In this document: positions 51,860 to 56,608 of the stretch, piece after piece | How the letters are laid out: each line of letters starts with the position of its first letter | How positions within the stretch are numbered: position 1 is the stretch's first letter | Origin: Diadema antillarum | Taxonomy: Eukaryota | DNA length: 64,000 bases | Assembly: GCF_040938485.1 (NCBI RefSeq) | Contig: NW_027271445.1 | Span: 1,302,001 to 1,366,000 of the forward strand | Direction: 5' to 3' | The notes under the pieces: model-generated | Told to the model about the DNA's origin: nothing | The model's database searches: none | The model's input: the letters and a program-made list of their open reading frames with translations, nothing else | Program-made: the position numbers and the translations under genes

Positions 51860-52930
51860 TGTATATTATACATATATATATGCATGTATATTATACATAC
51901 ATATATGTGTGTTTATGTATACATTTATACATAATTATATATATTGTATATATGATTATTAATATTTTCAAATGGGTTAGCATTTTAGGTCATGAATCAT
52001 TTATTATTTGCTTTCAAAATTTCATCCGTAAATGATATAAAGAAATACATGAATGTAAGAAAAAAAATCTTCAATCATTCACGAGTGACACCCTCATCTC
52101 TGATCAAAACCACGAATATATAATATTATGAATATTGGTCCTCATTGATTCAAGATATCTCCATTTTTGTGTGAAAAGGGAAAACGGCTGCATAAAAAAA
52201 GAAAATTATGTGGGGATACAGATATGCAAGAATGATCGATGGGTTGATCTAGAATAAGTTTAAAAACCATAATAAGTAAATAAATCAATCAAGTTAATAA
52301 ATCAGTTCACACTGAAACTAACTACTTCATCTTCACCTTGGCCGTGGACAATACGTGTTATATGTTCCACATGTTCAACATATAATCAAAGGGTGAATGG
52401 GGTTGGAGTCTTGATGTTAAAGAAAAAAAATCAATTGGGCAAAAGTTTAGTTGGTACGGAAACAAAGGCGGGACTAGTTTTGGTTTGGAGGTAGTACTTC
52501 CTTGGGTTTAGGATTATTAGATTCAACATCAATTCCAACTAACGAATGGAGTAGGATGTTTGGGGTTGACTCAACCTGATCGTAAATCATGGTTTGGCTG
52601 TACTTGGTCTTACAATAAGATGGAGAGATGAGGCTAGATGTTCCATCATACAGTGAGAGAACACTGGAATCCTTCTTACATTCAGGTGGTATACTAAAGA
52701 ATGTTGGAGATCAGTGACTTACTCGAGGTGAAGTCAAGAGTATAGGTTGAGGTCATTGACTGGCCGGAGGTGAAGAGGCATATCCGATCATCAAAGTGGA
52801 ATATGAAGGGGGTAGTAATAATTAACTTTGTGTATGATTACACAATACTCTACAAAAGTTATCAGTGAAAATGAGGGGGATTTCCTTGCGAGTAGGTCTA
52901 AGCAATCTATCTACTGCATAAACACATATA

Positions 52931-54355
52931 TTACAATTTATTATCATCGTATTCATTAGTTGCCGGCTTGTCTGTTATGCTTTCCTCGTTGGGTGACATA
53001 GATTTATTTTCGACTCCAACTTTAACATCATTTATTACGTCGTTTGTTTCTAGAATTTCGAGGTCTTTGTTACTGTCTTCTTTCCAAATGGTGCGTCGAA
53101 GAAGTTTACGAATGAAAACTAGAGAAAAGCACGCAAGAATAGTAAAGAAGAAGGAGAGAAGGGGCACAGATATTGCTAGATTTGACTCCGGAGGTGGATA
53201 TACTCTAGTAAGTACCACCACTGCGAACGAAGCGTTCTGGACTCCTGTCTCCAGCACCACGACAATGGCCTGGTTATTGTCCAGGCGAAACAATTTGGCG
53301 ATCATTCCGCCAAGGAGTCCTCCGCAACAAGGCAACAGGATCGCAGAGACATAAACAGATGGAGGAGAAAGAAAGACGTACCATATGAAGGGAATCAAGA
53401 TAGCTTGTGAAATGACAACGGTAACGATAACGACAGGCTTCAAAATCTTTAGCACCTTCTCTTTAATCTTTGGCGCTCTGTTGTTAAAAAGCATCCCCAA
53501 TATAACGGGAGTGATCAAGATCGCCGCTTGTATAGCCACTTGTTCAAAAGGTGTTTGTATATCATTCGTTTCGACGAACCTTGAGTATATAAAAATATTC
53601 AAGGGCATCATACCAAATGCCAGAAGCGTGGAACAAGTTGTCATGGTCATACTTAGGACAAAGTCTGCATCCAGCAATAGAGCAAAATCGTTGCTAACCT
53701 TTCCACCCGGGGAACATCCCATCATCAACAATCCTACATGTAGGGCGTAAAAGGCACCAAGTTTTAGTACTTTAGCGATACCTAACGATAGCGCGGGCAT
53801 CACCACGAACTGGCAGATAAATCCGATGATAAGCGGACACGGTGCTTTAAACGTCTGAATGACAAGTCTGAACTCAATTGCTGCTCCCATCATGAAGAAA
53901 GTACCCATTAATGGCACGTAGAACGCGTATTGGAGGATAACCTGGATGATGCTATTGCCAACGTTCACCTTGACGGTCAGTGTGGCCACCTGCTCTTTTA
54001 CGTCCGATCCAACCGACGATGCCCAAACCAACAGACTCGAAATTCCGATGTGCTGTCCTCGTATGGTAAGTTCATGAGTAACAGGGAACTGATGATCAGG
54101 AGATGCGGACAGACACTCGATTAAGTTGATGACTTTGAACGTGTAGACATTCTCGCTTTCGAAGGACATGCAGAGGTTTTCTGATCCTTCGTAAATGAGT
54201 ACAGTAACGTTGACAGTCTGTTCCTGGCGCTCGAACACGACAACCTGGTGGGTGTTCAAGAAGCTTACATTTGGCATTAACTGCCCGCAGCAATGACGAA
54301 CGAACATGAGTAGTAAGAGGATAAGGAGAGGAGAATGGCTGTTGTTTCCATCCAT
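52931..54355 (-). CDS. SLC10A-like: SLC10-family sodium/bile-acid symporter-like protein, copy 2 (474 aa from MDGNNSHS)
   Basis: Uninterrupted ORF with the same motifs as copy 1; about 87% identical over the first ~200 aa by eye. I place the start at ATG 54355 because it aligns with the copy-1 start and begins the signal peptide. The ORF-track start at 54439 adds 28 aa that look like an intron polypyrimidine tract. Confidence 0.92.
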   Translation of the reverse strand: MDGNNSHSPLLILLLLMFVRHCCGQLMPNVSFLNTHQVVVFERQEQTVNVTVLIYEGSENLCMSFESENVYTFKVINLIECLSASPDHQFPVTHELTIRGQHIGISSLLVWASSVGSDVKEQVATLTVKVNVGNSIIQVILQYAFYVPLMGTFFMMGAAIEFRLVIQTFKAPCPLIIGFICQFVVMPALSLGIAKVLKLGAFYALHVGLLMMGCSPGGKVSNDFALLLDADFVLSMTMTTCSTLLAFGMMPLNIFIYSRFVETNDIQTPFEQVAIQAAILITPVILGMLFNNRAPKIKEKVLKILKPVVIVTVVISQAILIPFIWYVFLSPPSVYVSAILLPCCGGLLGGMIAKLFRLDNNQAIVVVLETGVQNASFAVVVLTRVYPPPESNLAISVPLLSFFFTILACFSLVFIRKLLRRTIWKEDSNKDLEILETNDVINDVKVGVENKSMSPNEESITDKPATNEYDDNKL

Positions 54356-54568
54356 CGTTACGCGGTATTTCTGTCTGTCTGGATGTTTAGCGCAAGAAAA
54401 TAACGTAAAGAAATAATTAACGATACAATACAAGATCATCTGGAACTTATAAACAGCGATAGAGGTACTTATACCTTTTGACGTGTACTGAATGTTTTTA
54501 CTAACGTCTCTGTATAATGAATAAGTATCGTCTGCTTAATATAATAGTCTATATCTAGGTATGAAAGT

Positions 54569-56608
54569 CATGGCCGGCGCAGCCGTGGGGGCCGTGGGGG
54601 CTCGGGCCCCCACACTTTTTGTGCACCATCCAAAGGAATACATAAGGTGTCATCACTTTGGGCCCCCCCACTTTTTTAACCTGTACATAAAAAAGATGAT
54701 CCTCATGAAATTAGCAATTATCGTCCTATTTCTTTATTGCCTAGTATATCCAAAATCTTAGAAAAAATTGTTTATAATAGACTTCTTAAATTTATTAATA
54801 AGTATGATTTACTTATTCCCAATCAATATGGTTTCAGAAAAAATTATTCAACTGATTTAGCACTAATACAAATTTATGACAAAATTACAAGTGCTTTTGC
54901 AAACAAAGAACATGTTGCAGGTATATTTTGTGATTTGAGTAAAGCATTCGATACTCTTGATCATTCTATTTTACTCAACAAACTTAGTCATTATGGTATT
55001 CGAGGACAAGCACTTTTATGGCTTAAAGATTATCTAACTAATAGAAGAAAATATGTTATTTTTAATGGTTGTGAATCTGACCCCCTTCTAATTAAATGTG
55101 GTGTTCCTTAAGGCTCAATTCTAGGCCCATTATTATTCCTTCTTTATGTTAATGATATCATAAATACATCCTCTCTTCTCTCTTTTGTTCTATTTGCTAA
55201 TGATACGAATATATTTTATTCTCATAAAGATCTTAAGATTTTAAATGACACTTTAAATATTGAAATTAGTAAAGTATCAAATTGGTATAAGTCTAATAAA
55301 CTTTCTTTGAATATAAAAAAGACTCATTTTATTCATTTCAAACTTCATTCTCATAATGAAGATACGTTGATACATATTAATATTGATGATATCCCATTAG
55401 AAAAGAAAATGAATTCAAAATTTTTAGGAGTATATATAGATGAAAGTTTGACTTGGAATGAGCATTTACATCATGTTACAACGTGTATTTCTAGAAATAT
55501 AGGGATAATTTCCAAGCTGAAGTTCTTTCTTCCTCGTTCAACTTTATTTCTATTATATAATTCCTTAATTCTCCCATATATAAGTTATTGCAATGTTGTA
55601 TGGGGTACTTGCGGCTCTACCAAAATAAATTCTATATTTAAATTACAAAAGAAAGTTATACGTATTTGTACAGGATCGCATTTTCTGGCTCATACCGATT
55701 CTTTATTTCATGAGCTTAAAACATTGAAGGTTTTTGATTTGAATATTATTCAAGTAGCAGTAATTATGTTCAAATATATACATCAGCAACTTCCATCATC
55801 GTTTGATAACATGTTTAGGTTCAATACTTCTGTCCATTCGTACCCTACTCGTATATGTAGAAATTTCCACCTTTTGAATCCCAAATTATTAGTGACACAT
55901 AAATCTATAAGACATTCGGGTCCGGATATTTGGAATAATCTCCCGGATAATATAAAGTCTTGTTCAAGTATTTATTCTTTGAAAGCTTCACTTAAACGAT
56001 ATTTGATACAATTATATTCTCCAAACCAATTGAGCTAACAAATATTTATAGTATTGATTGTCATCTTATTGTCAATCTCTATTTTCTTCCTTCAACTGCA
56101 TCTTGCACTCTCACCTGCAACTGCACTGCACTCACCTGATCACCTTCCTCCAAGAGAGTTATGTCGTTGGATAGTCATTTTATGAGGCCTCCATCCATTT
56201 CAAGCTTAATCGCTTATGATGGTGGTCTCCTGCATTCAATTATCTCTGTTGTTTACTGAAAAATACTGTATATTTTATTTTATGTTACTGTGTATCTACA
56301 TTGCTCAATGCAATCACCTATGTGAATCTATTTATGTACTGTTATCGATTTATTTCACTGCACTTGTTATTCTTTGTCTTTGTACTTTTTGAAATTTGCA
56401 TTCAAGTTGCATCTGATTGAATGCAGAAATAAAAGCAAATAAACAAACAAACAAACTTTTTTAACCCGGAAGTACGTAAGTGGCACTAAAATAGAAATAG
56501 ATAGGGATCTTAAAGGATGGCCTTTTTTTTTTTTTTTTTTTTTTGCTTGTCAGCTGAAGAAACCCGGAAGTAGGCCCTCACACTTTTGAAAACACTGCGC
56601 CGGCCCTG
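54569..56608. mobile_element. Non-autonomous DNA transposon (MITE, ~255 bp) split by the LINE insertion; 5-bp TSD
   Basis: TIRs CATGGCCGGCGCAG (54569-54582) and CTGCGCCGGCCCTG (56595-56608) match at 13/14. Direct repeat AAAGT at 54564-54568 and 56609-56613. Confidence 0.8.
54682..56454 (+). mobile_element. 5'-truncated non-LTR retrotransposon (CR1/L2 group, Crack/L2-like), inactive ORF2 reverse-transcriptase fragment with 3' UTR and (CAAA)n tail
   Basis: One reading frame over 54680-56038: PVHKKDD..NYRPISLL, QYGFR, DLSKAFD, GVP*GSILGP, FANDT, GPDIWNNLP..LKRYL. In-frame TAA at 55109-55111 (GVPQG to GVP*G). Catalytic FADD is mutated to FAND (55193-55204). The element is flanked by the 12-bp direct repeat ACTTTTTTAACC (54670-54681 / 56455-56466). 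Confidence 0.93.

What the first reader, a model, noticed from the sequence alone, without database searches (positions are those of the whole stretch)
53735..53742. Transposon-footprint-like TA-CATG-TA insertion adds His-Val to a membrane helix of SLC10 copy 2
Seen: copy 1 reads GCG CTG GGA TTG (A-L-G-L). Copy 2 reads GCC CTA CAT GTA GGA TTG (A-L-H-V-G-L), a 6-bp in-frame insertion that turns a TA into TACATGTA. Established: Tc1/mariner elements duplicate TA, and elements with CA...TG ends can leave TA-CATG-TA excision footprints. Inference: an element jumped into the coding sequence and excised, leaving a frame-preserving footprint just before the CSPGG crossover helix. The ORF stayed intact, so this may be a transposon footprint fixed as a protein change.
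Basis: partly seen in the sequence, partly recalled or inferred. Interest (0 to 1): 0.72.

Follow-up and report, generated by a model that had tools for sequence, protein, structure and literature searches.

The report
Tc1 transposon scar in urchin transporter
A six-letter scar of the kind a Tc1-type jumping gene leaves when it departs adds His-Val to a membrane helix of one duplicated sea-urchin SLC10 transporter gene, but it is a rare variant in a copy that looks dispensable, so it is a clean example of a known process, not a fixed protein innovation.

Summary
On the minus strand copy 2 reads GCC CTA CAT GTA GGA TTG, and copy 1 reads GCG CTG GGA TTG.

The decisive evidence is an empty allele. 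The second haplotype contig (C618) carries the same copy 2 reading GCC CTA GGA, so a single TA became TACATGTA. Contigs from three other read sets also lack the six bases. Only one read set, possibly from the assembled animal, keeps them. Copy 1, seven more distant in-genome paralogues, six sea-urchin homologues and NTCP all have the short form, so the insertion is derived.

The genome is Diadema antillarum or a very close relative. It holds a 1.9-kb Tc1-like element family in at least 10 copies that are 99.8-100% identical. Each copy is flanked by TA and ends CA...TG, and one insertion is heterozygous. TACATGTA is about 3.5-fold over-represented in 135 kb sampled.

A Tc1 excision footprint is therefore the best explanation (about 0.85). 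"Fixed as a protein change" is not supported:
- The variant is polymorphic.
- The empty allele on C618 carries a stop codon and a frameshift.
- The His-Val haplotype also has a 1.8-kb retroelement insertion upstream of the gene.
- AlphaFold confidence collapses at the crossover only in the His-Val protein.

The scan noted the same type of scar elsewhere in this genome (s1-215094). The mechanism is textbook, so interest is modest.

The parts
53735..53742 (.). TACATGTA: TA target duplication flanking CATG. The six extra bases can be placed at 53735-53740 or 53737-42. They lie inside the 12-bp palindrome CCTACATGTAGG (53733-53744), built on the ancestral palindrome CCTAGG.
   Evidence: One search reports '6 left out at 53735' in X7, X4 and X5.
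53735..53740 (-). Codons GTA (Val207, 53735-53737) and CAT (His206, 53738-53740) of copy 2. These are the two added residues.
   Evidence: Read directly from the sequence.
53702..53716 (-). Codons for C214-S-P-G-G218, the crossover motif of the discontinuous helix.
   Evidence: P216 and G218 invariant. NTCP alignment.
52931..54355 (-). SLC10 copy 2. It is intronless and 474 aa from MDGNN; the open frame runs on to 54439. It has a signal peptide, a beta-rich N-terminal domain of about 130 aa, and an SBF transporter core.
   Evidence: One search gives Pfam SBF at 6.3e-31. Model.
40345..41781 (-). SLC10 copy 1, the tandem paralogue (478 aa). It is 76% identical in protein and 90% in DNA, and has the short form.
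54023..54025 (-). Codon Trp111 (TGG). In the C618 allele of copy 2 it reads TAG, a premature stop.
53952..53953 (-). Site where the C618 allele, and the contig of read set X7, carry one extra base, causing a frameshift.
   Evidence: One search reports 'put in behind T at 53952' in X7.
54682..56457 (+). About 1.8 kb bearing reverse-transcriptase-like ORFs. It is present on this haplotype and absent from C618, and starts about 330 bp upstream of the copy 2 ATG. Boundaries are approximate.
   Evidence: (ORFs 54737-55111 and 55307-56038).

Best explanation
A Tc1-like cut-and-paste transposon inserted at the TA of codon Leu205 (CTA) of SLC10 copy 2 in the germ line of a Diadema sea urchin. This duplicated the TA. 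The element was later excised by its transposase, which cuts the non-transferred strand two bases inside the element. That leaves CA and TG overhangs on the two flanks, and end-joining sealed them as TA-CA-TG-TA. The net gain is 6 bp, so the reading frame is kept and His-Val is added to the short helix that leads into the CSPGG crossover of the transporter core. Shown here: the single-TA ancestral state, the derived and polymorphic status of the insertion, and resident, recently mobile Tc1-like elements with TA|CA...TG|TA ends. Inferred: the insertion and excision events themselves, and the 2-nt stagger of the local element family. The variant is most likely neutral or mildly harmful, and sits in a paralogue under relaxed constraint.
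For: (1) Empty allele. Copy 2 on C618 reads GCC CTA GGA in otherwise 97%-identical, collinear sequence. Contigs of X7, X4 and X5 lack exactly these 6 bp. (2) Polarity. Copy 1, seven more distant in-genome paralogues and six urchin homologues have no residues at these two columns, and the NTCP structure chains shown residue by residue lack them too. (3) Source elements. DDE_3 matches are abundant. One family of 1.9 kb has 10 copies at 99.8-100% identity. Every copy is flanked by TA and ends CACTAC...GTAGTG. Its ORF carries HTH_Tnp_Tc3_2 and DDE_3 domains and it has terminal inverted repeats. One copy (L031) is heterozygous, with a clean single-TA empty site on the allelic contig. (4) TACATGTA occurs 6 times in the window against 1.77 expected, with 0 of 100 shuffles reaching 6. 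In 135 kb it occurs 14 times against 3.9 expected (P = 6e-5), the second most enriched non-microsatellite palindromic 8-mer. (5) Published rule: Tc1/mariner excision leaves 2-3-nt 3' overhangs, and end-joining leaves the first or last 2-4 element bases between the TA copies (PMC3878927; PMC6943129). (6) The inserted CATG is not complementary to the flanks, so hairpin-derived (P-nucleotide) repair does not produce it. It is also not a tandem duplication (direct reading of the sequence).
Against: No allele with an element at this TA was seen: there were no joints or loose ends at 53735-53742 in four read sets. The cutting stagger of the Diadema family is unknown. A 3-nt stagger, as in Sleeping Beauty, would predict a different scar. 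I could not retrieve a paper that states TACATGTA itself as the Tc1/Tc3 footprint, so that detail rests on my own knowledge of van Luenen et al. 1994. In the 32 kb of haplotype alignment only this one canonical scar was found.
Confidence: 0.85

Rival explanations
1. The 6 bp were added by ordinary repair of a spontaneous double-strand break, or by a replication error, with no transposon involved. The match to TA-CATG-TA is then a coincidence.
For: Non-duplicative 4-10-bp indels do occur between the two haplotypes. No occupied allele was found. The site was picked out after the fact from a 64-kb window.
Against: The exact pattern needs both a TA target and one specific 6-mer. The bases are not copied from the flanks. 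The genome holds mobile elements with matching ends. TACATGTA is enriched about 3.5-fold.
Confidence: 0.1
2. The six bases are an assembly or sequencing error on contig C557.
For: Only one of the four read sets shows them, at depth 5.5, and that set may come from the assembled individual.
Against: An independently built contig of X1 spans the site over 530 nt with no gaps. A clean palindromic 6-bp insertion outside any homopolymer is not a usual error type. The frame stays intact.
Confidence: 0.03
3. His-Val is ancestral, and the short forms are deletions.
For: None found.
Against: Every comparator has the short form: the copy 2 allele on C618, three read sets covering two organism labels, copy 1, the distant paralogues, the other urchin genera and the NTCP chains aligned.
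Confidence: 0.01

Closest known systems
Tc1/Tc3 excision footprints of Caenorhabditis elegans, and the canonical Sleeping Beauty footprint TAC(A/T)GTA
   Same: A TA target is duplicated, the terminal element bases are left between the two TA copies, and the break is repaired by end-joining (PMC3878927, PMC6943129). From my own knowledge, in-frame footprints that restore partial gene function are known from Tc1 revertants of unc-22 and unc-54.
   Different: This is a natural, segregating germ-line allele in a sea urchin, not a laboratory revertant. The scar has four inner bases (2+2), not the three of Sleeping Beauty. The element that left it is not identified.
Plant Ac/Ds, Spm and Tam footprints that add amino acids to proteins (own knowledge, e.g. 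Schwarz-Sommer et al. 1985)
   Same: Transposon insertion and excision inside an exon leaves a frame-preserving footprint, creating a new protein allele.
   Different: hAT and CACTA footprints come from hairpinned flanks with variable sequence and an 8- or 3-bp duplication. Here the scar is the fixed TA-CATG-TA of the Tc1 type.
SLC10 (sodium/bile acid symporter family; NTCP, ASBT, and SLC10A3-like members with a long N-terminus)
   Same: Pfam SBF core. The CSPGG crossover, the Ser-Asn of the Na+ site and the ETGxQN motif are conserved.
   Different: The gene is intronless, is one of at least ten paralogues in this genome, and has a beta-rich N-terminal ectodomain. The substrate is unknown. The C557 allele has two extra residues in the half-helix before the crossover, which no other member examined has.

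Membership tests
Tc1/mariner excision footprint | The ancestral (empty) site is a single TA at exactly this position. | tested here: met
   The C618 allele reads CCCTAGGA. X7, X4 and X5 lack the 6 bp.
Tc1/mariner excision footprint | The derived site has two TA copies flanking a few bases. | tested here: met
   TA-CATG-TA at 53735-53742.
Tc1/mariner excision footprint | The inner bases equal the terminal bases of an element family resident in the same genome. | tested here: met
   A 1.9-kb Tc1-like family ends 5'-CA...TG-3' next to TA in all 10 copies. Its domains are HTH_Tnp_Tc3_2 and DDE_3.
Tc1/mariner excision footprint | That family was mobile recently enough to account for a polymorphic scar. 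| tested here: met
   Copies are 99.8-100% identical with an intact ORF. The L031 insertion is heterozygous, with a clean TA on the allelic contig.
Tc1/mariner excision footprint | The transposase cuts 2 nt inside the element, so that CA and TG remain on the flanks. | not testable with these tools
   This needs an excision assay or a catalogue of verified excision sites for this family.
Tc1/mariner excision footprint | An occupied allele (element still at this TA) exists in some individual. | tested here: inconclusive
   No joints or loose ends at the site in four read sets. These were contigs only, from few individuals.
SLC10 / SBF transporter | Match to Pfam SBF above the curated cut-off. 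| tested here: met
   108-109 bits against a cut-off of 24.3 for both copies. NTCP structures match at 4e-33.
SLC10 / SBF transporter | Crossover motif and Na+-site residues conserved (CSPGG, Ser-Asn, ETGxQN). | tested here: met
   Invariant columns G213, P216, G218, S221, N222, E369, T370, G371, Q373 and N374.
SLC10 / SBF transporter | Canonical spacing of the half-helix before the crossover. | tested here: not met
   The C557 allele of copy 2 has two extra residues that no other sequence examined has. Model confidence falls from 92/87 in copy 1 to 64/52 in copy 2 over residues 201-220. This bears on the allele's function, not on family membership.

The most novel reading that the evidence does not exclude
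The His-Val allele encodes a working transporter with altered properties, and it is kept in the population because the alternative copy 2 allele is null. In that case a transposon scar is being recruited as a functional protein variant in a recently duplicated gene.
Probability: 0.08. Interest if true: 0.55.

Novelty: new member of a known kind. Interest (0 to 1): 0.33.

Why it matters
This is an unusually clean natural example of a transposon scar inside a coding sequence. The empty allele, the scar allele and the likely source element family are all visible in one genome. It shows that Tc1-type elements are currently mobile in Diadema and that they leave frame-preserving scars in exons. It also gives a concrete pair of alleles (with and without His-Val in the half-helix before the SLC10 crossover) for testing how tolerant that helix is. 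It does not reveal a new mechanism, and it does not show adaptive recruitment.

Tried and rejected
- Literature. Full-text searches for TACATGTA or CATGTA together with footprint, excision or Tc1 found no paper stating this exact scar. Plasterk 1991 (PMC452867) is not held. I therefore cite only the general rule.
- Haplotype comparison. I tried to fetch the whole C618 counterpart of the window. Only 32 kb could be aligned, and the five other TACATGTA sites in the window could not be checked for polymorphism.
- Second DDE_3 family (352-aa ORF, more than 30 copies). The copies are 99.9% identical across the whole 4.4 kb fetched, so the element ends were not reached.
- Allelic sites of other element copies. 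L025 has no second contig. The L026 flank is itself a repeat; its best other match (87%) has a single TA and no scar. The L032 counterpart could not be cut out.
- Expression. No RNA run holds the gene, so expression of copy 2 is unknown.
- Public protein records. The exact copy 1 and copy 2 proteins are not in the public protein collection.
- Rejected mechanisms. P-nucleotide (hairpin) repair is rejected because the inserted bases are not the complement of the flanks. Tandem duplication is rejected because no adjacent copy exists. Gene conversion is rejected because no paralogue carries the six bases.

Full report
**What is there**

The window is contig C557:1302001-1366000 of a 1.75-Gb genome. 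An ORF from another contig of this genome is 485/486 identical to an annotated Diadema antillarum protein. The animal is therefore D. antillarum or a very close relative.

The minus strand carries two intronless tandem paralogues of the SLC10 family (Pfam SBF, E about 1e-31):
- Copy 1 is at 40345-41781 (478 aa).
- Copy 2 is at 52931-54355 (474 aa from MDGNN; the open frame reaches 54439).

The copies are 90% identical in DNA and 76% in protein. dN/dS between them is 0.34 overall and 0.25 in the membrane core.

**The observation**

Copy 2 reads GCC CTA CAT GTA GGA TTG, where copy 1 reads GCG CTG GGA TTG. The DNA alignment has one clean 6-bp gap at this point. On the plus strand the site is TACATGTA at 53735-53742. 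It sits inside the perfect 12-bp palindrome CCTACATGTAGG.

**The decisive comparison**

The genome search found a second contig, C618, with the same tandem gene pair. C618 is collinear with the window at 95-98% identity, including non-coding DNA. I read it as the other haplotype of a highly heterozygous animal.

Copy 2 on C618 reads GCC CTA GGA TTG.

I laid the contigs of four public read sets on 52700-54700. The six bases are "left out at 53735" in X7 (organism A), X4 and X5 (organism B). They are kept only in X1 (organism A), the best holder, at depth 5.5. X1 may come from the assembled individual. Its contig mixes C557-type and C618-type letters, which could reflect a different haplotype or bubble-popping in a heterozygote.

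**Polarity**

The two residues are absent from copy 1, from seven more distant paralogues in this genome, and from six homologues of Strongylocentrotus, Lytechinus and Diadema. The NTCP structure chains that were aligned residue by residue lack them as well. The insertion is therefore derived, and it is polymorphic rather than fixed.

**Is a Tc1-type element a credible source?**

A search of the genome with Pfam DDE_3 gave hundreds of candidates, several with intact ORFs and identical scores. One family stands out:
- It is 1.9 kb long and present in at least 10 copies at 99.8-100% identity.
- Every copy is flanked by TA and ends 5'-CACTAC...GTAGTG-3', that is TA|CA...TG|TA.
- Its ORF has HTH_Tnp_Tc3_2 and DDE_3 domains, and it has terminal inverted repeats.
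- For copy L031, the left and right flanks map to adjoining positions on an allelic contig and share a single TA. That insertion is therefore heterozygous, and the family has moved recently.

Published work states that Tc1/mariner transposases leave 2- or 3-nt 3' overhangs. It also states that end-joining leaves the first or last 2-4 element bases between the duplicated TAs (PMC3878927; PMC6943129). With a 2-nt stagger, a CA...TG element gives exactly TA-CA-TG-TA. That Tc1 and Tc3 cut 2 nt inside the element is my own knowledge (Vos et al. 1996; van Luenen et al. 1994). I could not retrieve a paper stating it.

**Chance and background**

- Between the haplotypes I found 183 indels in 32 kb. 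Nine are 6 bp long. About half of those nine are microsatellite or tandem events, and only the one at 53735 is TA-to-TA-NNNN-TA.
- TACATGTA occurs 6 times in the window against 1.77 expected, with 0 of 100 shuffles reaching 6.
- It occurs 8 times against 2.2 expected in 71 kb of unrelated loci.
- Together that is 14 against 3.9 (P = 6e-5), the second most enriched non-microsatellite palindromic 8-mer out of 256.
- One of these sites is CATG in the middle of a (TA)n microsatellite (L065).

My counts agree in direction. In my 32 kb, however, scars were a small share of mid-sized indels, not half.

**Alternatives**

- The inserted CATG is not the complement of the flanks, so hairpin (P-nucleotide) repair of the hAT or V(D)J type does not explain it.
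- It is not a tandem duplication.
- No paralogue carries it, so gene conversion is excluded.
- An assembly error is unlikely, given the X1 contig.
- A transposon-free random insertion remains possible, at about 0.1.

**Consequence for the protein**

His206 and Val207 lie 6-7 residues before Cys214 of the CSPGG crossover. They fall in the short half-helix that precedes it (TM3a in NTCP numbering, from my own knowledge).

I modelled both copies with the same 14-sequence alignment:
- Copy 1 gives pLDDT 92 and 87 for residues 201-210 and 211-220, with a helix at 201-211 and a short break after it.
- Copy 2 gives 64 and 52, with a helix at 201-209, an eight-residue unstructured stretch, and pLDDT below 50 at residues 213-217.

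This suggests local disturbance. It may partly reflect the alignment gap, so I treat it as an inference.

The same allele also has Gly at residue 200, where the C618 allele, copy 1 and most of the urchin homologues have Asp.

**Status of the gene**

The C618 allele, which has no scar, carries TGG-to-TAG at Trp111 and a 1-bp insertion near codon 135. The same 1-bp insertion is present in read set X7.

The C557 haplotype has about 1.8 kb of retroelement sequence bearing reverse-transcriptase-like ORFs. It starts about 330 bp upstream of the ATG and is absent from C618.

X4 and X5 lack the scar and the frameshift, so intact short alleles may exist. The stop-codon position in those two sets was not among the rows shown. 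No RNA data were available.

Copy 2 therefore looks like a redundant paralogue carrying several independent lesions, and the scar is one more tolerated variant.

**Verdict**

- A Tc1-type excision footprint is the best explanation (0.85).
- "Fixed as a protein change" is not supported.
- The mechanism is already known, and this is a clean new natural instance of it.

Noticed in passing
L004/L011 (C618:201899-203315), corresponding to window 53952 and 54023-54025: The other haplotype's copy 2 is a pseudogene allele, with Trp111 TGG-to-TAG and a 1-bp insertion. The frameshift is also present in read set X7.
   Followed up: yes
window 54682-56457: About 1.8 kb with reverse-transcriptase-like ORFs (54737-55111 and 55307-56038) is present on this haplotype and absent from C618. 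It starts about 330 bp upstream of copy 2. Contig depth rises to 10^4-10^5 from about 54570, so it sits within a very high-copy repeat.
   Followed up: partly
window plus 71 kb of other loci: TAGGCCTA is the most enriched non-microsatellite palindromic 8-mer (6 sites against 0.56 expected). It is another TA-NNNN-TA word, and may be the scar of a second element family with GG...CC ends or part of a repeat.
   Followed up: no
L051-L060 (e.g. G000:C2:2900216-2904671): A second DDE_3 family (352-aa ORF) has more than 30 copies that are 99.9% identical over more than 4.4 kb. It is larger than a typical Tc1 element, and its ends were not reached.
   Followed up: partly
L005-L020 and further places listed: The SLC10 family is expanded in this genome. 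There are at least ten intronless paralogues, each present on two contigs, some in tandem clusters on C29 and C1316 that include broken copies. The paralogues translated are 449-566 aa, longer than the NTCP structure chains (300-354 aa). In the two modelled copies (window copy 1 and copy 2) the extra N-terminal residues (about 29-131) form a beta-rich domain.
   Followed up: no
L031 (G000:C1327:658294-661725) against G000:C840:157390-157990: There is a heterozygous insertion of the 1.9-kb Tc1-like element. The allelic contig has a clean single TA and no scar.
   Followed up: yes
window about 32600-33000: A run of N (an assembly gap or masked stretch) lies inside a mechanical ORF.
   Followed up: no
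window 53756-53758 (codon 200 of copy 2): The C557 allele has Gly (GGT) where the C618 allele, copy 1 and most of the urchin homologues have Asp. This is a second derived change five residues before the scar.
   Followed up: partly
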